A DNA stretch of 62,966 bases, counting the filler, from Octopus bimaculoides (lineage: Eukaryota), in assembly GCF_001194135.2 (NCBI RefSeq). It is 6 parts of 5 records of this genome, joined end to end, with 100 filler letters (N's around TTAATTAATTAA, not from the genome) between each part and the next. Parts side by side here need not be neighbours in the genome. Positions count along the whole stretch, not along the records: positions 1 to 8,063 come from NW_026429210.1; 5 more parts are not named here. One strand, written 5' to 3'. A program made the position numbers and the translations under genes. Each line of letters starts with the position of its first letter. Position 1 is the first letter of the stretch. Under the pieces are notes generated by a model. The model did not search any database and was not told the DNA's origin. It worked only from the letters and a program-made list of their open reading frames with translations. This document shows positions 1 to 11,264 of the stretch, one piece after another.

Positions 1-875
1 AGTTGAAGTTGAAGAAACCGTTATTTAGAAACTAACAAGGAATCAGTCTGGTTTGGGGCCCTAAACTATACTTATGCATCAGGTCCTTCCTTTGTGGTCC
101 CTTCTGTTTTGTACTTGGGGTCATTGTTTAGGTAAATATTTGACAACTTTACAATATTTCTGTTCATGAAAAAGTCATAACTTCTAATTGTATAAAATAT
201 ATTTAATGAGAGAAGCATTTAAAATACAATAAACAATAAAATGTGCTGTAATTACAGGATGCGATATTCAAGAAAGAATAATGTGTNNNNNNNNNNTATA
301 TATAGATTCAATATGGTACTTAAGTTTAGGCACCAGAAATATTCGTTACCTGGGAAGAACTGTGCATTCACAAGTTCTCCTCCGTCTCCCCTGTTTTCTT
401 GTGAGAAATTAGCCAATCTGGCTTGTGTCACTAGATTCATAGTTAGTCAAGAGGCTGGTGGGTTACCCAGAGTTCTGAAGTTAGTGTTGACAAAAACAGG
501 GTGCAGATGAGAATAAGAATCTCCTCCAAAATGTTCTCAATTCTATGAAAATAATCTTAATCTGGACGTTTGAAAACTCATCTCTGTAAAGTTTAATTTA
601 AAGAAACCATTATTGAAAAACCAACAAGGAATCAGTCTGGTGTGGGGCCCTAAACTGTACTTATGTATCAGGTTCTTCCTTTGTGGTCCCTTCTGTTTTG
701 TACTTGGGGTCATTGTTTAGGTAAATATTTGACAACTTTACAATATTTCTGTTCATGAAAAAGTCATAACTTCTAATTGTATAAAATATATTTAATGAGA
801 GAAGCATTTAAAATACAATAAACAATAAAATGTGCTGTAATTACAGGATGCGATATTCAAGAAAGAATAATGTGT
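1..875 (+). repeat. Direct duplication with 589-bp offset (1-286 repeated at 590-875), first copy ending at a 10-N gap
   Basis: About 65-286 appears identical to 654-875; the first ~60 nt carry several substitutions. Confidence 0.85.
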
Positions 876-1065
876 AGGGTTGCCAGGAGATTTGGTTGAG
901 AGGTCCTTACACCATGGAAAGGAAAGTTATGGGTGTTCAAGAAAAGAGTGGAAGATGAATATTCCATTAAAAAATGGAAAAAATCTAAAATTCTTGGAAA
1001 CACTTTTGTCACAATTTACAACAAAAGAATGTTAAATAAATACAGCAAAGAAGAAACCATAGAAA

Positions 1066-2337
1066 CTACTTTTTGCCTTTCTTCCCTGTTTTAATATGTT
1101 TGTGTTTAGTTAAGTGAATACTTTGAGAAAATGATTTACCACAGATATCACAATGATATGGTTTCGCTCCTGTATGAACACGTTTGTGTTTCTTTAAATC
1201 ATTACTTTGAGAGAATGATTTACCACAGATATCACAGTGATATGGTTTCTCTCCCGTATGAAGACGTGTGTGTTTTGTTAAGTTACTACTGTCAGAGAAG
1301 GTTTTATTGCAGAAATCACAATGATATGGTTTCTCTCCAGTATGAACATATCTGTGTGTAGATAAGTGACTACTGTTAGAGAATGATTTACCACAGATAT
1401 AACAAGAATACGGTTTCTCTCCAGTATGAAAACGTATGTGTTTTTTTAAGCTACTATTGTAGGAGAATGATTTACCACAGATATCACAATGATATGGTTT
1501 CTCTCCAGTATGAATATATTTGTGTGTAGATAAATGACCAGCGCTAGAGAATGATTTACCACAGATATCACAGTGATATGGTTTCTCTCCAGTATGTATA
1601 CGTGTGTGTATAGATAAGGCACCACGTTGGAAGAATGATTGACCACACGTATCACAGTGGAACAGTTTCTCTCCTGTGTGAATATATTTGTGTCGAGATA
1701 AGGCACCACGTTGAGAGAATGACTGACCACAGATATCACAACGATATGGCTTCTCTCCTATATGAGTACGTTTGTGCACAGCAACCTGACCACTGAGAGA
1801 GAATGACTGACCACAGATATCACAATTATATGATTTCTCACCAGTATGAATACGTTTGTGTTTTGATAATTGACTACGGTCAAATGATTCGCCACAGATA
1901 TCACACTGATATGGTTTCTCTCTAGCATGAATATATCCGTGTCTTAATAAGCTGTTACTGTAAGGGAATGATTTACCACAGATATCACAGTGATATGGTT
2001 TCTCTCCCGTATGAAAACGTGTGTGTTTTGTTAAGTTACTATTGTCAGAGAAGGATTTACCACAGATACCACAGTGATATGGTTTCTCTCCAGTATGAAT
2101 ATATTTGTGTGTAGATAAGTGACTACTGTTTGAGAATGATTTACCACAAATGCCACAACGATACGGTTTCTCTCCTGTATGAACACGTATGTGTGTTGTT
2201 AGGGTACCACTTGCAGAGAATGATTTACCACAGATAACACACTGATAGGATTTCCCTCCCGTATGAGTATGTTTGTGCATAATTAGGTTACTTTCTTGAA
2301 AGGACTTTGTACAGACATCACAGTCATATGATGTCAT
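1066..2337 (-). CDS. ZNF-A: single-exon tandem C2H2 zinc-finger protein, 15 fingers (last one degenerate)
   Basis: Repeated CxxC-x12-HxxxH with TGEKP linkers. The ORF-track start at 2349 is TTG; the first ATG is at 2337-2335. In-frame TAA at 2355-2353. Confidence 0.92.
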
Positions 2338-2702
2338 CTCTTTTTTCAAGTGTTACAGGGAAAAATCAATTCTATAATTTTCTCTTTTCTATTACTTTTT
2401 CTTCTCAAATTCCAGTTAATATACTTTTCTTGCTTTTATACGTTGTTCCTTACATACACTTTTACTGCTGGATTTCTGTCCAGTGTTACCTTTGCTTAGC
2501 AACACTTCTATAAATCTATCCAACTTTAATCAGCACAAAATCTTCTCTTCTTGACACTCCAGTCAGCAATGTTCAGAAAATTAGTTAATAATTCTTCCAC
2601 AGATTCGTAGAAACAATGTTACACGTCTGTTTCGTATAATATCTTTCTTGAATCTTTAAAACAAGGCAGATATTGAGGATGCTTCTCCTGTCTTCTCATA
2701 TT
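2338..2702 (-). other. Probable 5' UTR portion of the ZNF-A coding exon, with splice acceptor at 2703
   Basis: Minus strand reads ctctataatttcag|AATATG, resembling the ZNF-B acceptor ttgttatttcag|AATACA. An alternative acceptor (tttctacag) would start the exon at 2757. Confidence 0.45.
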
Positions 2703-2814
2703 CTGAAATTATAGAGAAGCAACAGTGTAAAATTCGATTCATTTCTATTGAGATAAACTGTAGAAACAAACATTTCTTTTAACAACTGAGCTGGATGCCA
2801 ACAGTTCTATGAAG

Positions 2815-3155
2815 AAGTTCCAATCTCTCAAAGAAGATAGAAGTGGGACACCCAAGAAGACATGGGAAAGTCTCAGGTAATATGATAAAGACCAAGATGC
2901 CTGGCTCCCAGCTGTACTCCACAGCAGAAATATTCAGACTCATCCATCTCATGGCAAAAAGCAATTCTGTGGTGGCACATAAAATTGCCTGTGCAGTGCC
3001 ACATAAAAGCAACCTGTGAACTGTGAAGTGGTTGGCACTAGGAAGGGCATCTAGCTCTAGAAACCATAAAAAATTAACACTGGAGTGTGCTGCAGCTTCC
3101 CTTCTCAAACCATCCAACCCATGCCAGCATGGACAACAGGCATTAAAAGATGAGG
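2815..3155 (+). mobile_element. RTE-type LINE / RTE-tailed element, 3' end fragment
   Basis: Decayed (G)RPxKTW...KDxDxW-like coding remnant followed by ggaagggcatc(t)agc and ccatccaacccatgccagcatgga...ttaaa-gatga; the same tail occurs at 22505, 40803 and 58790. Confidence 0.6.
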
Positions 3156-4586
3156 GTGAACTTAATTCATTAAAATTGACATCATAGGATCCTGTGTGAA
3201 GCTTCCATATTTGCAAACTACACTGACACCTTCCCATTGTGTAACAGTTTGAAAATAAAAACTACAGAATGGTGGACACCAACATTAGTCTTTCTCCAGA
3301 AATATAACTTGACATTGTTGTTTAGATCAAAGTCAGTTCTCACAGGAGCACATATGTGGTTATAGACATTCCACCCATGAACATCCTATCTATTTCTCTA
3401 ACATTCTATATCTATAATTATGTCATCCAATACAGTCTTCTCCCACAGGAGAGATTGAAGTGGAATGTGCTGTTATTTCTAGGAGTTCATGTGATCCCAT
3501 GGGGAACTGCTGGGCCTACAATTTTTGACTGATGAAGCAAAAACAAACATTGATGAATGATGAAAAGCCAACGAAATTAGGGGAAAAAATTTGAACAACT
3601 TTGGTTTCCATCCAAGTGATTTGAAGTTCGGTCCCACAGAGCAGCACCTTGAGCAAGTCTCTTCTTTAATAGCAGCAGTGCACATCTAAAGCCATCTGAA
3701 TGGATTTGATAGACAGAAAATGAAGGAAGGTTGTCCTGTGCGTCTTCATATCACTTCACATCAACATGAAAATATGTGCAGACATGGGCAAATATTACCT
3801 TGCTTGGAAACTGATGAGGGTTCATAACAAGAAGGCCATCTGGCAGAAGAACGTCTGCCTGACCCACAAAAGAATGGGAAAATGGGTTTTTAATCGTGCC
3901 AATTTNNNNNNNNNNNNNNNNNNNNNNNNNNNNNNNNNNNNNNNNNNNNNNNNNNNNNNNNNNNNNNNNNNNNNNNNNNNNNNNNNNNNNNNNNNNNNNN
4001 NNNNNNNNNNNNNNNNNNNNNNNNNNNNNNNNNNNNNNNNNNNNNNNNNNNNNNNNNNNNNNNNNNNNNNNNNNNNNNNNNNNNNNNNNNNNNNNNNNNN
4101 NNNNNNNNNNNNNNNNNNNNNNNNNNNNNNNNNNNNNNNNNNNNNNNNNNNNNNNNNNNNNNNNNNNNNNNNNNNNNNNNNNNNNNNNNNNNNNNNNNNN
4201 NNNNNNNNNNNNNNNNNNNNNNNNNNNNNNNNNNNNNNNNNNNNNNNNNNNNNNNNNNNNNNNNNNNNNNNNNNNNNNNNNNNNNNNNNNNNNNNNNNNN
4301 NNNNNNNNNNNNNNNNNNNNNNNNNNNNNNNNNNNNNNNNNNNNNNNNNNNNNNNNNNNNNNNNNNNNNNNNNNNNNNNNNNNNNNNNNNNNNNNNNNNN
4401 NNNNNNNNNNNNNNNNNNNNNNNNNNNNNNNNNNNNNNNNNNNNNNNNNNNNNNNNNNNNNNNNNNNNNNNNNNNNNNNNNNNNNNNNNNNNNNNNNNNN
4501 NNNNNNNNNNNNNNNNNNNNNNNNNNNNNNNNNNNNNNNNNNNNNNNNNNNNNNNNNNNNNNNNNNNNNNNNNNNNNNNNNNNNNC

Positions 4587-4910
4587 AGATCGGGCGTTGT
4601 GAGTGTTTATTGAGTGAAAACACCTAAAGCTCCACGAGGCTCCGGCAGGGGATGGTGGCGAACCCTGCTGTACTCTTTCACCACAACCTTCTCTCTCACT
4701 CTTTCTTCCTGTTTCTGTTGTGCCTGTATTTCAAAGGGTCAGCCTTGTCACACTGTGTCACGCTGAATATCCCCGAAAACTACGTTAAGGGTACACGTGT
4801 CTGTGGAGTACTCAGCCACTTGCACGTTAATTTCACGAGCAAGCTGTTCCGTTGATCGGATCAACTGGAACCCTCATCGTCGTAAGCGACGGAAGTGCCA
4901 ACAACAACCG
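4587..4910 (+). mobile_element. tRNA-derived SINE family A, 5' end lost in the gap
   Basis: High similarity to 6865-7190; ends in gccaacaacaac. Confidence 0.85.
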
Positions 4911-5124
4911 AAAGATCACCACTGGTGCATTCTAATACATATAAATACATATATTTAATATATTTACATGGAAACTGTAAATGTATTTGATATAAGATGG
5001 ACAAAAAAATCACATTTGCGGGAAAACGTAACAGTAATCGATGCACGAAAGGCATGGATGGTTATCTTCGATTTCTTTGTTTCACTCTGGATGTTCATGA
5101 AGGTATGGTGCAAATGAACCACCA

Positions 5125-5535
5125 CGAGGCACAGTTGTCTTTTCCAACCACATGGTTCCAGGTTCAGTCCGACTGCATGACACCTTGGGCAAGTATTTCT
5201 TATCATAGTCTTAAGTCGACCAAAGCTTTAAAAGTGGATTCGGTAGACAGAAACTGAGAGATGCCCGTCGTACACATACTCACGTGTGTGTGTGTGTGTC
5301 CCCCATGACAATCAGTGTTGCTGTATTTAGTTCACCATAACTTAGTAGTTCAGCTAAAGAGACCGATAGAATAAGTACTAGGCTTACAAAGAATAAGCCC
5401 TGGGGGCGATTTGCATCACCCACTCAGTGCAAGCCATTCCGATCCTCCGCCTTTATTGTTTCAGCCTAATTTTAATTTACTCTTTTACTCGTTTCACTCA
5501 TTTGACTGCGGCCATGCTGGAGCACCGCCTTTAAA
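5125..5535. mobile_element. SINE family B copy (+) followed by an inverted family B tail (~5480-5535)
   Basis: ccaaccacatggttccaggttcagtc head, gagaccgatagaataagtactaggc body, then the reverse tail catttgactgcggccatgctggagcaccgcc. Confidence 0.75.
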
Positions 5536-5869
5536 TCTACAAATTTGAGAAAATAAAAGTCTGTGGTGTATAAATTATCCACAACCCTTCATTCAGTTGT
5601 ATTTTTCTTTTCCCAACAAATTCCAACCGAATCCTTCTCTAAACAATCTAAAAAAAGGTTCTTTCAGATAATTTAATTTTTCAGAAAGATAGGAGGAAAC
5701 AAATTCCAAGTTGGTTGGGGCACAGATCGATAGTAATATTGAGAAAGAATCGATAAATTAAAATAAAGAATTGGTTTCCAAACATTTCAGTTGTTGGAAA
5801 ATATTTGAGAATCTTTCTCAAACTAAAACACAAACAACAAACGACGGAGAGGGAAGAAGGTGGCCTCCG

Positions 5870-6560
5870 TAGCTAGAAATAGCAGTCAAATCCCGAACAA
5901 CTCATAGACATATCTCTTTCGTAGTTAGAAATAGCAGCCAAATCCCGCACGAATAAAGGACATTTNNNNNNNNNNNNNNNNNNNNNNNNNNNNNNNNNNN
6001 NNNNNNNNNNNNNNNNNNNNNNNNNNNNNNNNNNNNNNNNNNNNNNNNNNNNNNNNNNNNNNNNNNNNAAATAGCAGCAAAATCCCGCACGAATAAAGGA
6101 CATTTCTCATTCATAAATAGAAATAGCAGCAAAATCCCGCACGAATAAAGGACATTTCTCATTCATAAATAGAAATAACAGCCAAATCCCGCACGAATAA
6201 AGGACATTTCTCATTCATAAATAGAAATAGCAGCCAAATCCCGCACGAATAAAGGACATTTCTCATTCATAAATATAAATAGCAGCAAAATCCCGAACAA
6301 CTCATAGACATATCTCTTTCGTAGTTAGAAATAGCAGCCAAATCCCGCACAGATCATAGACATGCCTTCCATAGCTAGAAATAGAAGTCAAATTTCGAAC
6401 AAAATAATAGATATCTCTCTCTTAAAGCTAGAAATAACAGCCAAATCCCGCACGGATCATAGACATCTCCCTTCCGTAGCTAGAAATAGCAGCCAAATCC
6501 CGAACAAGTCATAGACATATCTCTTTCGTAGCTAGAAATAGCAGCCAAATCCTGCCATAA
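5870..6560 (+). repeat. Minisatellite of ~52-bp units with core TAGAAATAGCAGCCAAATCCCG (left arm of inverted structure)
   Basis: More than 10 visible units in at least two subtypes (…cacgaataaaggacatttctc… and …aacaactcatagacatatctc…); partly in a gap. Confidence 0.9.
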
Positions 6561-6652
6561 TTCAAGGACATGTTTCATTCCTAAAACCTAGAAACGAGAA
6601 ACTTCGCCCCGAACGGAATTAAAAACAATAAAAAGGATTTTCTTTGTTAAAA

Positions 6653-7421
6653 ACTTACGGAAAAGATTTTCTGTTCAAGAATCTTTTTCAGGTTTGAGTA
6701 AAAAACGGAAGAGGAAATAAGAAAGGGAAATAAATAAGTTCACGTGTGATTTAGTCATGTGACGATGGGACTTGATTGGCGGCGGGAATATGACGTCATG
6801 AGTGGAGGCACTATGGCCCAGTGGTTAAGGCAGCGGACTCGCGGTCATAGGATCACGGTTTCGATTCCCAGACCGGGCATTGTGAGTGTTTATTGAGTGA
6901 AAGCACCTAAAAGCTCCACGAGGCTCCGGCAGGGGATGGTGGCGAACCCTGCTGTACTCTTCCACCACAACTTTCTCTCACTCTTACTTCCTGTTTCTGT
7001 TGTACCTGTAATTCAAAGGGTCAGCCTTGTCACACTGTGTCACGCTGAATATCCCCCCGAGAACTACGTTATGGGTACACGTGTCTGTGGAGTGCTCAGC
7101 CACTTGCACGTTAATTTTACGAGCAGGCTGTTCCGTTGATCCGATCAACTGGAACGCTCCTCGTCGTAAGCGACGGAGTGCCAACAACAAATGGAGATAA
7201 TGAGACTTGGCTGCTTTTAATTATTGCAGAAGAGGAGAGACGCATGCGCATTGAACATGCCTCCAACCTGATGTTGACATCCGGTCAAATGTCTTACGCT
7301 TTAATTTCTCTTAATTAATTGACAATAAATCCATTTAGAATTCTTAGAATCCAGATCTCGACTACCACCATATACCCACATATATAAACAACACTATCCT
7401 TTCTGAAACATTTGCGTAAGT
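6653..7421. promoter_or_regulatory. Putative bidirectional promoter with two divergent first exons
   Basis: CACGTG 6741, ATTGG 6775, GGCGGGA 6781, TGACGTCA 6791, CGCATGCGCA 7241. Minus-strand GTAAGT donor at 6658-6653 and plus-strand GTAAGT donor at 7416-7421. Confidence 0.6.
6802..7190 (+). mobile_element. Full-length tRNA-derived SINE family A inserted in the promoter core
   Basis: A box TGGCCCAGTGG, B box GGTTTCGATTCC, body shared with 4587-4910, (CAA)n tail. Confidence 0.9.
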
Positions 7422-7529
7422 ATTAATGAAAATATTCAATGTTTTTAATTCTGTAGACGTTCGCTTTTTGGCGCCAAAATTCTTTCTTGCTCTTCTATCC
7501 TTTAGCAAAGAGAGATGTCCTTGATTTTT

Positions 7530-7865
7530 CAGGGATTTGGCTGTTATTTCTAGCTATAGGGGAGAGATGACTGCATTGTGTGGGATTTGGCTGTTATTTC
7601 TAGCTACAAAAAAGATATGTCTATGACTTGTTTGAGATTTGGCTGCTATTTCTAGCTTTAGGAGAGAGATGACTATGAATTGTGTGGGATTTGGCTGTTA
7701 TTTCTAGCTACAAAAGAGATATGTCTATGAGTTGTGTGGAATTTGACTGGTATTTCTAACTATGGAAGGGAGATGTCTATGATTTGTTTGAGATTTGGCT
7801 GCTATTTCTAGCTTTAGGAGAGAGATGACTAAGAATTGTGTGGGATTTGGCTGCTATTTCTAGCT
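7530..7865 (-). repeat. Minisatellite, inverted relative to 5870-6560 (right arm)
   Basis: About 7 units with core GGGATTTGGCTGCTATTTCTAGCT. Confidence 0.9.
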
Positions 7866-8107
7866 ATGTAAGGTACCGTACATGGTTAGTATTATTTTTT
7901 TTTTTTCTCAAATACATTTCAATCGCTGAAATGTTCAGAAACCAATTCTTCGTAAAGTTTTCATTTATTTATTTATATTCATTTTCATGACCTTTTGAAT
8001 TTGTCATTCATTTTCAAGTGAGGGAAGAAAAAATCGAAAGATGGCCCTTTTTGTGTGTGTATANNNNNNNNNNNNNNNNNNNNNNNNNNNNNNNNNNNNN
8101 NNNNNNN

Positions 8108-8119
8108 TTAATTAATTAA
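8108..8119. other. Artificial gap spacer TTAATTAATTAA (also at ~27960, 40747, 57543, 60084)
   Basis: The identical 12-mer sits between N runs five times and contains stops in all six frames. Confidence 0.9.
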
Positions 8120-8163
8120 NNNNNNNNNNNNNNNNNNNNNNNNNNNNNNNNNNNNNNNNNNNN

Positions 8164-8196
<33 letters not shown>

Positions 8197-8340
8197 GGTA
8201 TGTATGATTCTGTATAGAAGAATATATTACTCAAAGAAATTCCAACTTTGATTTTCACGTTTTATTTACAATCTTATTTGATATAATATAAGATAATATA
8301 ATATAATAAAATGATAGAGTATTAGATATCCATTCTTGAT

Positions 8341-8385
8341 TGAACTAGTACTTTCAGGCGTTAAACTCTGCAATCTTCAGGTTCA
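8341..8385 (-). ncRNA. Minimal type I hammerhead ribozyme motif (minus strand)
   Basis: Minus strand reads TGAAC-CTGAAGA-TTGCAGAGTTTAACGCCT-GAAA-GTACT-A-GTTCA. Stem I TGAAC/GTTCA is perfect; stem II is partly decayed. Confidence 0.6.
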
Positions 8386-9207
8386 TGTAGCAGTAGTAAC
8401 AGTTATGTTTTACAATTTACAACTGTAGTGAGGTGGCTAAACTGTGTGCCTTAAATACATTTGTATAGGTTCCGGAAGGTTAATTGTTGCAAACTATATT
8501 CTGACCAATCAGTGCGTGGCTTTACTAAATTACATAAGTTGATTGGTGTTTTTGGTTTAGGCGTCACGGTTTGTTGAACATGTCAAGAGACCTGTATTTT
8601 GACCCTGGCCAAAGCAGTAATTGTTGGGTTATTTTTAGAAATGTAAACATTTTCCAGAGATTTTTACATTTCAGTTATTTTCACCATTATCATTTCCTTT
8701 ATTATTGTTGTCGTTGTTGCTGTTGTTGTTGTTAATGGTGGTGGTGGTGGTGGTGGTGGTAAGAGTAGCTGTGGTAATAGAACTTTAAACCCCAAAATAA
8801 GATTATTTTTGCTGACTTTTCTCTTGACTTAGCTAGTATTTCCCTGCTATCGTCATCATGAGCACCTTTAGTATTGTTGTTGTTGTTGTTGTTAAGGGTC
8901 GTAGCAGTAGAAATAGTACCTCTAAGTATTATTATTGTTTATTTAGCTTGGGCTGGAATTTATTAATAAAGTTCTTTTCTCTGATTTTTTAAAAATTTCA
9001 CTTGAACTGTGTAGTTTGTAGAATGGAAATATAAATATTTTCCGACCGTATGTTGCTAAACAAAACACCAATCAACTTAATTTAGTAAAATCACACACTG
9101 ATTGGTCAGAATACCAAATGGAGCCTATGCAAATGTATTTAAGGCACACAGTTTAGCCATCTCACTACAGTTGTAAATTGTAAAACATAACTGTAACCAC
9201 TACTATA

Positions 9208-9252
9208 TGAACCTGAAGATTGCATAGTTTAATACATGAAAGTACTAGTTCA
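9208..9252 (+). ncRNA. Minimal type I hammerhead ribozyme motif (plus strand)
   Basis: TGAAC-CTGAAGA-TTGCATAGTTTAATACAT-GAAA-GTACT-A-GTTCA. CUGANGA and GAAA cores, palindromic AGTACT stem III, predicted cleavage after A9247. Confidence 0.65.
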
Positions 9253-9344
9253 ATCAAGAATGGACATTTAATACTCTATCATTTTATTATATTATATTAT
9301 CATAAGATTGTAAATAAAACGTGAAAATCAGATAAAGTTGGAAT

Positions 9345-9498
9345 AGTGGTTGTGTGGTAAGTAGCTTGCTTACCAACCACATGGTTCCAGGTTCAGTCCC
9401 ACTGCATGGCACCTTGCGCAAGTGTCTTCTACTATAGCCTCGGGCCGACTAAAGCCTTGTGAGTGGATTTGGTAGACGGAAGCTGAAAGAAGCCTGTC

Positions 9499-9587
<89 letters not shown>

Positions 9588-9595
9588 TGTGTCTG
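9345..9595 (+). mobile_element. SINE family B with internal (GT)n
   Basis: gtgtggtaagtagcttgcttaccaaccacatggttccaggttcagtccc...gtggatttggtagacggaagctgaaagaagcc. Confidence 0.85.
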
Positions 9596-9759
9596 TGTTC
9601 CAGACATACAAGGTTAGAAAATACTAGCCAAAGGCGTCGCACAGTAGGACTGAACCCGAATCCAGGTAGTTCGAAACAAACTTCTTAAGATTTTGCACGT
9701 CTTCAGAGACTGACAGAAGGGAAACTCGAAGGTTTCTGCAAAGCGTGGACATGAAACAG

Positions 9760-10045
9760 AGTGGATTCTGTATCTTCAGCCTCTCACTTAACAAAGCTAT
9801 TTTCAAAGGCGCTTCTATGTATTACAGTGATGCTTTAAAACGATTTGGTTTCACTGGAAAAATTAAACGTATAAGAAATAATAAAACACCCAGTATCACG
9901 AAAAATATAACTAGAAATAGGAACATAATCTGGTATAATTTCTTTTTAACCCATAAGTCCTGTCCCCAGTAGTAAAAATTTTCTTTAATTTGTTGTAAAA
10001 CATTCCTCTACAAGCATAAGTATAATAATCTTGTCAATAAAATCT
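9760..10045 (+). mobile_element. Penelope-like element remnant (region C-terminal to the RT)
   Basis: Translates to YYSDALKRFGF...RNRNIIWYN, then frameshifted KIFFNLL..HxPLQHKY, matching the PLE motif YxDALKxSGY...RNIIWFNPP...HFP. Confidence 0.65.
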
Positions 10046-11264
10046 GCAAAAAATATTTCTTAGTCAACCACACCTAATTTCGGATAAATTTATCTAATAT
10101 GAACGTTAAAAAAATAATATTTCACTATTTTTAAATATGCAAAAAAATAGAGCGAATACCCACTTGAGCTTCGATATATCTTTAAATGCATTATTTACCG
10201 GGTGCCTCTGTGAATGCGAATTATTTTTCAATAATATATACTGATTTGGTGTCAAACTTTTTCACAATTCAACACCTTTATTCATTCGAAACTATCTTTG
10301 AACCAAGAATATAACTTTATCGACTTCCATTAGGAATTTCAGAAATTATATTAACTTTGTCGCCAGGTGGGAATTAATGTAAATAAGCAAATCATATAAC
10401 CATTCTAAAATTCCTTGTGGCTAAAGCAAATCAGAATCGTATGAAATTTTGGCAGACATTCTTCTTAATAAGCAAGCAGAAATGATTTCTACTTGCATAT
10501 ACAAAAGGTACGGGACGCTCAAAATTTTTAAGCCATTCGTCAAACAACTATTAGCACAAAAAAGGATGAAAGTTACTTCGTAATCTTCGTATGATATTGG
10601 ATGTTTTTAAAGTACAATGGTCTTTGTACTACCTTCATTGGATAACTCAATATTTTAGGTTTCTTGTAATCATTATAATACAATTTTCATTAAACCATTC
10701 CGGTTGAAAGAATTATAATATCCATTCGATTGACTTTTCCTGAAAACTCGTAATTACAGAACGAATTAAAATTTCAAGTGCAATCACAATTCAACAGCAT
10801 TTTAGTCATTATAAAAAATTGTGGAAAAATATTTACTCTTCCTTTATAAACCATTCTCTTGGCTTACATAACGCAGCTGTCACACAAACGAAAGCTTAAA
10901 AACAGTTAATGATAATTCATTGATTCAATGCACACTTAATCATATTTCTATTGTACAATGTTAGCACCCCATAAAGCCAAGAAAGCCAAGAAAATATTTT
11001 TAAAGAATATGATTCCTTCGATAAGCCTTAATCCTATAAAAATAGCTTTTATATCTCTAATACTCTTTAGAACATCGATCGACTCATCAGTTTTCCCTTT
11101 CCACGATGTTTTCTCTAACTTTTGCTTAAAAAGCTAAATATTTTTTATATATGCAAAAATTTTTTCAAAATTTGTTTCAGCACTATTCCTGAAGAATTCG
11201 AAAGAAAAACTGCACTGTAATTCAGTAATTTGTAACTGTTCTCATTTTTGCAAGTTACTGCCGA

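What the first reader, a model, noticed from the sequence alone, without database searches (positions are those of the whole stretch)
5765..7950. Mirror-image promoter: two divergent first exons with homologous inverted first introns, only one leading to a gene
Seen: homology extends beyond the minisatellites. The outer blocks 5765-5812 and 7900-7950 (aagaattggtttc..aacatttcag...tatttgagaa) and the inner blocks 6545-6627 and 7440-7540 are reverse complements. Each arm starts with a GTAAGT donor (minus 6658, plus 7416) followed by similar text (gtaagt..taa..aaaat....tgtttttaattc). The ~760-bp core holds E-box, CCAAT, CRE and NRF1-like motifs. Inference: an old inverted duplication of a ZNF 5' module produced a bidirectional promoter. 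The left arm plausibly splices to ZNF-A (acceptor ~2702). No plus-strand ZNF CDS is visible for 46 kb, so the right arm is orphaned, drives a lncRNA, or feeds a CDS hidden in a gap. This suggests cluster growth by palindromic duplication of promoter plus exon 1.
Basis: partly seen in the sequence, partly recalled or inferred. Interest (0 to 1): 0.75.

Follow-up and report, generated by a model that had tools for sequence, protein, structure and literature searches.

The report
Head-to-head octopus zinc-finger gene pair
The mirror-image region is the shared upstream region of two neighbouring Octopus bimaculoides zinc-finger genes that point away from each other, each with a related first intron carrying a 52-base repeat; this is ordinary gene-cluster architecture, not a jumping element or an orphan promoter.

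Summary
The inverted structure is real. The window is Octopus bimaculoides scaffold LGKD02134351.1.

- **The right arm is not orphaned.** Past the piece's edge there is a 1353-N gap. Directly after it lies an intact 311-aa C2H2 zinc-finger ORF (ZNF-B) on the plus strand, 65% identical to ZNF-A. This is a head-to-head paralogue pair.
- **The arms belong to a gene unit.** A gap-free O. sinensis cluster holds three full and one partial same-strand unit. Their order is: conserved 220-bp element, CC|GTAAGT donor, inner block, one to three 52-bp repeats, outer block, further intron, TTTCAG acceptor, 5'UTR, ZNF CDS.
- **What the arms are.** They are the 5' parts of the first introns of a ZNF subfamily. 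They recur singly, oriented towards a gene, and collinear beyond their ends, with no target-site duplication. A foldback transposon is rejected.
- **Only the introns are mirrored.** The right side keeps the family's conserved upstream element (7189-7415). The left donor is preceded by an unrelated 137-bp promoter-like stretch (6664-6800). A 388-bp SINE (6801-7188) fills half the core.
- **The 5966-6068 gap** lies inside the repeat array and is out of phase, so its stated length is only nominal.

Transcription itself is untested. Interest is low.

The parts
1066..2337 (-). ZNF-A coding sequence: 423 aa, poly-C2H2, ATG at 2337, stop included
   Evidence: ORF. The same 423-aa product is on record as a called gene on LGKD02134351.1. 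Pfam zf-C2H2 and zf-H2C2_2 match in 12-14 stretches.
2338..2702 (-). Putative 5'UTR part of exon 2, with the acceptor TTTCAG|AA at 2703/2702. It holds the remnant of an ancestral N-terminal extension, now closed by a stop codon.
   Evidence: Stops occur in all frames upstream of the ATG. The stretch is 77-84% identical to the region upstream of four O. sinensis ZNF CDSs. The acceptor island is conserved in O. vulgaris L007. P0196 begins MERSKKILELISPEHMIKEM-RSYDCD.
2703..6657 (-). Putative intron 1 of ZNF-A. It includes the gaps 3906-4585 and 5966-6068 and interspersed repeats at 2988-3159, 4586-4905 (SINE) and 5141-5540.
   Evidence: The non-repeat segments are collinear, in order and orientation, with O. 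sinensis units. The repeats recur at unrelated loci.
5753..5860 (-). Left outer block: unique intron sequence distal to the repeat array
   Evidence: Matches the reverse complement of 7900-7969, z = 13.8. It is 84-89% identical to O. sinensis units and continues collinearly into 5752-5541 there.
5861..6585 (-). Left 52-bp minisatellite: 12 anchors seen (one a unit cut by the gap), plus an assembly gap inside it
   Evidence: Unit types a, b and c are shared with the right array. Type d (4 or more copies, 94-98% alike) is on the left only and flanks the gap.
6586..6663 (-). Left inner block, with the donor GTAAGT at 6658-6653
   Evidence: The donor context CC|GTAAGT(A/T)TT is conserved in all five copies that cover it.
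6664..6800 (-). 'Core L': a 137-bp promoter-like stretch upstream of the left donor. Reading towards ZNF-A it carries CRE, CCAAT, two E-box-like sites and CTTCCG.
   Evidence: Motifs and CpG o/e of 1.55. No homology to the right core, to canonical spacers or to any fetched locus.
6801..7188 (+). SINE insertion, with pol III A- and B-box-like head motifs
   Evidence: 93-96% identical to 4586-4905. 85-88% identical to copies at unrelated O. sinensis and O. vulgaris loci. ARAGORN and Rfam find no intact tRNA.
7189..7415 (+). 'Core R': the family's conserved upstream element (putative promoter plus non-coding exon 1 of ZNF-B). It carries an NRF1-like CGCATGCGCA and an ETS-like ACATCCGG.
   Evidence: Aligned with O. 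sinensis units u1, u2 and u4 and with a third, truncated O. bimaculoides copy.
7416..7506 (+). Right inner block, starting with the donor GTAAGT at 7416
   Evidence: It is 82-88% identical to O. sinensis units.
7507..7867 (+). Right 52-bp minisatellite: 7 units, almost free of CpG
7868..7969 (+). Right outer block
7970..8063 (+). 94 bp between the right arm and the 1353-N scaffold gap. ZNF-B follows the gap on the plus strand (L001 2921 to 1989, equal to window-scale 9417-10349).
   Evidence: No match on the left side or in any fetched locus. ZNF-B ORF and gap.

Best explanation
The region 5753-7969 is the space between two divergently oriented paralogous C2H2 zinc-finger genes in an Octopus bimaculoides ZNF cluster. 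ZNF-A runs on the minus strand (CDS 2337 to 1066). ZNF-B runs on the plus strand and starts directly after the scaffold gap at 8064-9416.

**The family's gene unit.** Each gene of this octopod subfamily has the same layout:
1. a roughly 220-bp conserved upstream element (putative promoter plus non-coding exon 1) ending in CC|GTAAGT;
2. a 2-4 kb first intron, whose 5' part holds an inner block, a 51-52-bp minisatellite and an outer block;
3. an acceptor TTTCAG|AA;
4. one exon carrying about 365 nt of 5'UTR and the whole finger array.

**How the mirror image arose.** The 'arms' are simply the 5' parts of the two first introns, placed in mirror image because the two units face away from each other. 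ZNF-B keeps the canonical upstream element (7189-7415). ZNF-A keeps the donor and the intron, but its upstream 137 bp (6664-6800) are unrelated and look like a different small promoter (CRE, CCAAT, E-boxes, ETS). A younger SINE (6801-7188) later split the two.

**Origin.** The head-to-head order arose long ago, either by inversion of one unit of a head-to-tail array or by an inverted duplication. A truncated, orphaned copy of the canonical upstream element sits about 7 kb beyond ZNF-A's 3' end, in the orientation an inversion predicts. That favours inversion.

**Shown:** the structure, the second gene, collinearity with O. sinensis units, conservation of the splice signals, and the SINE.

**Inferred:** that the conserved elements are transcribed first exons, that core L drives ZNF-A, and that the two promoters interact.
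For: - **Source.** The scaffold is O. bimaculoides GCA_001194135.2 LGKD02134351.1.
- **Second gene.** ZNF-B is an intact 311-aa ORF starting MTSYNCDICRKSF at the gap edge, on the strand opposite ZNF-A. It is 65% identical in protein and about 80% in DNA, and both proteins are poly-C2H2.
- **O. sinensis units.** Locus L005 has no gaps and holds three full units and one lacking core R, all on one strand. Each is collinear with window segments in this order: core R, inner block, 52-bp repeats (1-3), outer block, 5752-5541, 5140-4906, 3905-3160, 2987-2703, 2702-2338, CDS.
- **Donor.** It is conserved in A, B, u1, u2 and u4.
- **Acceptor.** It is conserved in 4 of 5 close units and in more distant O. 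vulgaris ZNF genes, where the flanks have diverged.
- **Spacing.** Donor to ATG is 4.3 kb for A and about 2.0 kb for B (gap length estimated). In O. sinensis it is 2.4-4.3 kb.
- **Shared history of the arms.** They share derived repeat-unit types a, b and c, and the first fingers share SNLIMHKH.
- **Sequence contiguity.** The central 2 kb is one contig, and the arms are only about 80% alike, so this is not a chimeric fold-back read.
- **Inversion hint.** A truncated core R copy lies at L001 18335-18473. Its canonical upstream spacer is collinear with the O. sinensis spacer, and no ZNF or intron lies downstream of it.
Against: - No transcript, TSS or splice-junction data could be reached, so the exons and promoters are inferred from conservation only.
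- The paralogues are young enough that introns are conserved about as well as the putative exons.
- ZNF-B is joined to the right arm only through a 1353-N scaffold gap. The 94 bp after the right arm (7970-8063) do not match the canonical unit.
- Core L matches nothing, so neither the inversion nor the duplication junction could be demonstrated.
- A and B are no more alike than each is to the O. sinensis paralogues (79-84% against 72-91% on short segments). Their sister relationship rests on a few shared derived characters.
- The core is not CpG-island-like overall (GC 37-38%).
Confidence: 0.8

Rival explanations
1. One reading: an inverted duplication of only the 5' module (promoter, exon 1 and intron) produced a bidirectional promoter. 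Its right arm is orphaned or drives a lncRNA.
For: The arms are inverted and homologous, and both donors are intact.
Against: An intact plus-strand ZNF ORF follows the gap, at the spacing expected for a canonical unit. The sequences upstream of the two donors are not homologous. The side with the canonical upstream element is the right one.
Confidence: 0.08
2. A foldback-type or long-TIR DNA transposon: terminal inverted repeats built of tandem repeats around a middle domain, inserted between two genes.
For: It resembles Drosophila FB elements superficially. There are long inverted arms made largely of tandem repeats, and the homology ends sharply at 5753/7969 and at 6663/7411.
Against: - No direct repeat flanks the ends.
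- In O. sinensis the arm sequence occurs singly, always oriented towards a ZNF CDS, and homology continues past the 'terminus' into 5752-5541 and on to the gene.
- The arms are absent from about 146 kb of other octopus ZNF loci, where the true interspersed repeats of this window recur many times.
Confidence: 0.03
3. An assembly artefact: a wrongly oriented contig or a collapsed inverted join creates an apparent palindrome.
For: The scaffold comes from a short-read assembly with four N runs within the piece and a 1353-N run at its right edge. One lies inside the left array and is out of phase. A 589-bp 96% duplicate flanks a 10-N gap at 287-296.
Against: Both arrays, both inner blocks, the core and the right outer block lie in one uninterrupted contig (6069-8063). 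The arms differ by about 20%, with indels and different unit composition. The order on the left across the gaps matches gap-free O. sinensis units.
Confidence: 0.05

Closest known systems
Divergent (head-to-head) gene pairs with a bidirectional promoter, as catalogued in vertebrates (from my own knowledge: TSSs less than 1 kb apart, enriched for ETS/GABP, NRF1, NFY/CCAAT and E-box sites)
   Same: Two genes on opposite strands. The putative first-exon donors are 757 bp apart, or 369 bp without the SINE. CRE, CCAAT, E-box, ETS-like and NRF1-like motifs lie between them.
   Different: There is no TSS or expression evidence. The region is not a CpG island. The two halves have different origins and are now separated by a SINE. 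They may act as two independent promoters.
Lineage-specific tandem clusters of poly-C2H2 ZNF genes: the octopod C2H2 expansion (PMC9795677 reports clusters and dates the expansion to about 41 Ma) and mammalian KRAB-ZNF clusters
   Same: Paralogous finger-array genes lie a few kb apart, duplicated as whole units including upstream region and intron. Pseudogenised members sit in the same array (O. sinensis u2 and u3).
   Different: Here one unit is inverted relative to its neighbour and has a non-homologous upstream element. There is no KRAB or other effector domain, and the CDS is fingers only.
Foldback (FB) transposons with tandem-repeat TIRs
   Same: Inverted arms consisting mostly of short tandem repeats around a unique centre.
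   Different: No TSD. The arms occur singly elsewhere and are embedded collinearly in gene introns. This is not a member.
Intronic minisatellites/VNTRs, and the reported enrichment of tandem repeats next to octopus C2H2 genes (Albertin et al. 2015, recalled from memory; the paper was not held)
   Same: A 51-52-bp tandem repeat tied to ZNF genes. Copy number ranges from 1-3 (O. sinensis) to 7 and at least 12 (O. bimaculoides).
   Different: The period is 52 bp, not the 70-90 bp I recall from that report. The repeat sits in the first intron of one subfamily. No function is known.

Membership tests
Foldback / long-TIR DNA transposon | Long terminal inverted repeats, often built of tandem repeats | tested here: met
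   Inverted arms of 560-910 bp with 52-bp arrays.
Foldback / long-TIR DNA transposon | Target-site duplication directly flanking the termini | tested here: not met
   No direct repeat at 5753/7969 or at 5766/7950.
Foldback / long-TIR DNA transposon | The whole element recurs at unrelated loci with the same termini | tested here: not met
   In O. sinensis L005 the arm sequence is single, gene-oriented, and collinear beyond the 'terminus'. It is absent from L002-L004, L006 and L007. Only about 235 kb was sampled, not the whole genome.
Bidirectional promoter / divergent gene pair | Two genes on opposite strands, head to head | tested here: met
   ZNF-A is on the minus strand. ZNF-B is on the plus strand after the 1353-N scaffold gap.
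Bidirectional promoter / divergent gene pair | Transcription start sites less than about 1 kb apart | not testable with these tools
   No TSS data. The conserved donors are 757 bp apart, so the TSSs would be closer than that if both exons are real.
Bidirectional promoter / divergent gene pair | Shared regulatory activity or co-expression | not testable with these tools
   Needs RNA-seq, CAGE or reporter assays.
Poly-C2H2 zinc-finger gene | Tandem C2H2 fingers with TGEKP-type linkers | tested here: met
   Pfam zf-C2H2 at E = 1e-81 (A) and 1e-63 (B). zf-H2C2_2 in 14 and 10 stretches. The DNA period is 84 bp.
SINE (6801-7188) | Interspersed copies at unrelated loci | tested here: met
   A second copy at 4586-4905 is 93-96% identical. 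Copies in L002-L004 are 80-88% identical.
SINE (6801-7188) | tRNA-derived head with pol III A and B boxes | tested here: inconclusive
   TGGCCCAGTGG and GGTTTCGATTCC are visible in the head. ARAGORN and Rfam give no tRNA match.
SINE (6801-7188) | Target-site duplication | tested here: inconclusive
   Only ATGA / ATGGA is found at the junctions.

The most novel reading that the evidence does not exclude
An inversion in an octopod ZNF array cut ZNF-A off from the family's promoter. The orphaned promoter was left about 7 kb beyond the gene's 3' end. The inversion fused ZNF-A's intact splice donor to an unrelated small promoter next to its neighbour's promoter, creating a new bidirectional regulatory unit. 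In this reading the conserved intronic 52-bp minisatellite, expanded in both O. bimaculoides genes and CpG-depleted in only one, is a family-specific cis-regulatory or epigenetic element rather than neutral repeat DNA.
Probability: 0.12. Interest if true: 0.45.

Novelty: new member of a known kind. Interest (0 to 1): 0.25.

Why it matters
The main value is as a correction. The striking 'mirror-image promoter with an orphan arm' results from reading a scaffold piece that ends at an assembly gap. With the rest of the scaffold and a gap-free sister-species cluster, it becomes an ordinary divergent pair of zinc-finger paralogues.

There are some modest positive results:
- It defines the gene unit of one octopod C2H2 subfamily: conserved upstream element, donor, minisatellite-bearing first intron, acceptor, and a single coding exon.
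- It shows that clusters of this family grow and rearrange as whole units.
- It gives a concrete case where one paralogue kept its splice donor but changed its upstream region. This can be tested with existing octopus RNA-seq.

Tried and rejected
- **tRNA and RNA families.** ARAGORN and Rfam on the whole piece found nothing.
- **Full-length ZNF-A protein search.** It was swamped by long vertebrate ZNFs, with only one distant octopus hit. That hit's loci, L002 and L003, carry only the interspersed repeats.
- **Short N-terminal profile search.** It returned only proteins of 72 aa or less. P0123's locus L004 was negative for the module. P0121 is not on record.
- The exact-sequence cluster look-up found neither protein.
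- **Other octopus loci.** P0245 and P0250 (L006, L007) lack the arms and cores; L007 has only the acceptor island.
- **Unnamed proteins.** The Logan, ENA and JGI ZNF hits were checked as possible octopus transcripts. None has this subfamily's N-terminus, so no cDNA evidence was obtained.
- **Core L.** It was compared with the right core, with the canonical spacers upstream of core R, and with all loci. There is no homology.
- **Missing exon-1 piece.** The roughly 60 nt absent next to the truncated third core R copy could not be found.
- **The 94 bp beyond the right arm.** They match nothing.
- **Literature.** Albertin et al. 2015 could not be retrieved.
- **Not used.** The sigma-70 promoter scan was skipped as irrelevant to a eukaryote. 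The metagenome, prokaryote-genome and viral collections were not scanned because they do not hold cephalopod genomes.
Full report
**1. What is in the sequence**

The piece (1-8063) has an 84-bp-period C2H2 finger array on the minus strand (1093-2277). It lies inside a 423-aa ORF from ATG 2337 to the stop at 1066. To its right sit two 52-bp tandem arrays in opposite orientation, 5860-6585 and 7507-7867.

Unique sequence on both sides of each array is also inverted-homologous:
- Outer blocks: 5753-5812 against 7900-7969, 50 of 59 aligned bases, z = 13.8 against shuffles.
- Inner blocks: 6613-6663 against 7411-7460, 37 of 44 aligned bases, z = 6.3.

GTAAGT starts at 6658 (minus) and at 7416 (plus). 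CACGTG (6741), CCAAT on minus (6775), TGACGTCA (6791) and GCATGCGC (7242) lie between them.

Three qualifications apply:
- 6801-7188, which is 388 of the 747 core bases, is an interspersed SINE. A second copy lies at 4586-4905 (93-96%), and copies at unrelated O. sinensis and O. vulgaris loci are 85-88% identical.
- The sequences directly upstream of the two donors (6664-6800 and 7189-7415) are not homologous to each other (score 34 against 28.8 +/- 5.2).
- The homology stops at 5753/7969, and the last 94 bp of the piece match nothing.

**2. The gap at 5966-6068**

Both flanks lie in the left array, in the same orientation, and carry the same unit variant. A unit head ends at 6069 and a unit tail begins at 5965, with 15 bases of the unit missing. 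The true gap should therefore be 15 + 52n bases.

The 103 N do not fit this. Anchor spacing across the gap is 140 = 2 x 52 + 36. The gap sits in a run of near-identical 'd' units (94-98% alike), which is the likely reason assembly broke there.

The two sides very probably belong together, and the order across the gap matches gap-free O. sinensis units. The copy number is unknown.

**3. Where the window comes from, and what lies beyond its edge**

The 423-aa product is on record on Octopus bimaculoides GCA_001194135.2, scaffold LGKD02134351.1. The fetched locus L001 is the reverse complement of the window (L001 position = 12338 minus window position).

The piece ends at 8063 because a 1353-N run follows. 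Directly after that run lies an intact 311-aa ORF on the window's plus strand, beginning MTSYNCDICRKSF. ZNF-A begins [13 protein letters not shown].

The two proteins are 65% identical, and both are poly-C2H2. The right arm is therefore not orphaned. The region lies between two head-to-head paralogues. This rests on one scaffold join.

**4. What the arms are**

A search with the first 250 aa of ZNF-A returned an O. sinensis protein, P0196, at 62% identity. Its locus L005 is 89 kb on CM016862.1 with no Ns. It holds four ZNF genes on one strand (a fifth ZNF-like region belongs to u2).

Upstream of each gene lie the window's segments in a fixed order and orientation:
1. core R (7189-7415)
2. inner block
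3. one to three 51-52-bp repeats
4. outer block
5. 5752-5541
6. 5140-4906
7. 3905-3160
8. 2987-2703
9. 2702-2338
10. CDS

Three conclusions follow:
- Everything between ZNF-A's ATG and its donor, apart from interspersed repeats, is the canonical first intron plus 5'UTR of this subfamily.
- The arm 'termini' are not element ends, because homology runs straight through the outer block.
- The arms occur singly. About 146 kb of other octopus ZNF loci (L002-L004, L006, L007) lack them, although the window's true interspersed repeats recur there many times.

No target-site duplication flanks the arms. The foldback-transposon reading is rejected.

**5. Splice signals**

The donor context CC|GTAAGT(A/T)TT is identical in position in A, B and O. 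sinensis u1, u2 and u4.

It is also the centre of a 43-bp island, ACACTGTTGTTTCTCT..TTTCAG|A.TATCAGA. This is the only part of the module still recognisable in O. vulgaris L007, which holds five copies, each in the sense orientation of a nearby ZNF gene. Four of them lie about 415-640 bp upstream of a called gene.

In O. sinensis the CDS starts 57 nt upstream of the MRSY codon, in the same exon (MERSKKILELISPEHMIKEM...). In ZNF-A that stretch carries a stop, and the annotated start is the downstream ATG. Exon 1 is therefore non-coding.

It remains inference, because the paralogues are young enough that introns are conserved about as well as exons, and no transcript data could be reached.

**6. 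Asymmetry of the core**

Core R is conserved in O. sinensis u1, u2 and u4, including the NRF1-like CGCATGCGCA and the ETS-like ACATCCGG.

Core L (6664-6800), read towards ZNF-A, carries TGACGTCA, CCGCCAATCA, CACATG, CACGTG and CTTCCG within about 140 nt of the donor. Its CpG o/e is 1.55. It matches nothing else fetched.

ZNF-B therefore has the family's upstream element. ZNF-A has the family's donor and intron behind a foreign, promoter-like 137 bp. The SINE between them is younger: its two local copies are 93-96% alike, against about 80% for the arms.

**7. Origin**

A-B identity is 84% over the first 170 nt of CDS, 83% over the inner block and 79% over the outer block. This is no higher than A or B against the O. 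sinensis units (72-91%). The arrangement is old, in line with a family expansion dated to about 41 Ma (PMC9795677).

Shared derived characters argue for a common A/B ancestor with an already expanded array. These are repeat-unit type b in both arms, 7 and at least 12 units against 1-3 in O. sinensis, and SNLIMHKH in finger 1.

A third copy of core R lies about 7 kb beyond ZNF-A's 3' end (L001 18335-18473):
- It has the window's plus orientation and is truncated about 70 nt before the donor position by a repeat insertion.
- Its upstream spacer is collinear with the spacer upstream of O. sinensis u4.
- No intron or ZNF lies downstream of it.

This is the layout expected if unit A was inverted within a head-to-tail array, leaving its promoter behind. 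The junction sequences could not be matched, so inversion against inverted duplication stays open.

**8. Verdict**

The 'orphan arm' and the 'palindromic duplication of promoter plus exon 1' are not supported.

This is an ordinary divergent ZNF paralogue pair in the known octopod C2H2 expansion. It has a family-specific intronic minisatellite and a possible promoter swap in one member. Interest is low.

Noticed in passing
window 5753-6663 versus 7416-7969: The two arms differ strongly in CpG content. The left has 29 CpG (o/e 1.12) and the right has 6 (o/e 0.39). Where left-arm and O. sinensis units read CG (CTACGAAAG, GTTCGG, GTGCGG), right-arm units read CA or TG. This suggests methylation-driven decay in ZNF-B's intron only. 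Recent amplification of CpG-bearing 'd' units on the left explains part of the difference.
   Followed up: partly
L001 18335-18473 (window scale about -6135 to -5997): A third, truncated copy of the conserved upstream element lies here. It points towards ZNF-A's 3' end and has its canonical upstream spacer, but no intron or ZNF downstream. It may be the promoter ZNF-A lost in an inversion. A degenerate single-finger relic lies 55 bp away on the other strand, at L001 18528-18746.
   Followed up: partly
window 1-286 and 590-875: A 286-bp direct repeat (96% identical, spacing 589 bp) lies in ZNF-A's 3' flank, with a 10-N gap at 287-296 right after the first copy. It is either a real tandem duplication or an assembly duplication. 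The flank is homologous to the 3' flanks of O. sinensis units.
   Followed up: partly
window 2338-2400 (minus strand): The stretch homologous to the O. sinensis N-terminal extension MERSKKILELISPEHMIKE is closed by a stop in ZNF-A (..[16 protein letters not shown]). ZNF-A's first finger also has a one-residue deletion between F and L (F-X4-L). The N-terminus of ZNF-A is therefore degenerating.
   Followed up: partly
window 2988-3159, 4586-4969, 5141-5540: These are further interspersed repeats inside ZNF-A's intron. Each recurs several times in unrelated O. sinensis and O. vulgaris loci at 70-96% identity. 5476-5533 is the best conserved, at up to 96%.
   Followed up: partly
L007 5342-5384, 9317-9359, 18369-18411, 21060-21101, 27022-27064: A 43-bp splice-acceptor island (polypyrimidine tract, CAG, then A.TATCAGA.GAC) occurs five times among more distant O. 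vulgaris ZNF genes, four times about 415-640 bp upstream of a called gene. The rest of the upstream region has diverged.
   Followed up: yes
L005 22872-24225 and 29680-30562: O. sinensis units u2 and u3 have stops or frameshifts right after the start codon region and look like pseudogenes. The RefSeq-derived product P0196 (gene range 69 kb, non-finger C-terminus) looks like a chimeric model that reads out of unit u1.
   Followed up: no
window 7868-7900 versus 5813-5860: The transition from the last repeat unit into the outer block differs between the arms. The left and all O. sinensis units read ..GGAAGCTACCTTCT..CTCCGT.., while the right reads GTAAGGTACCGTACATGG followed by a T-run. This is a local replacement or deletion in ZNF-B's intron.
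   Followed up: no
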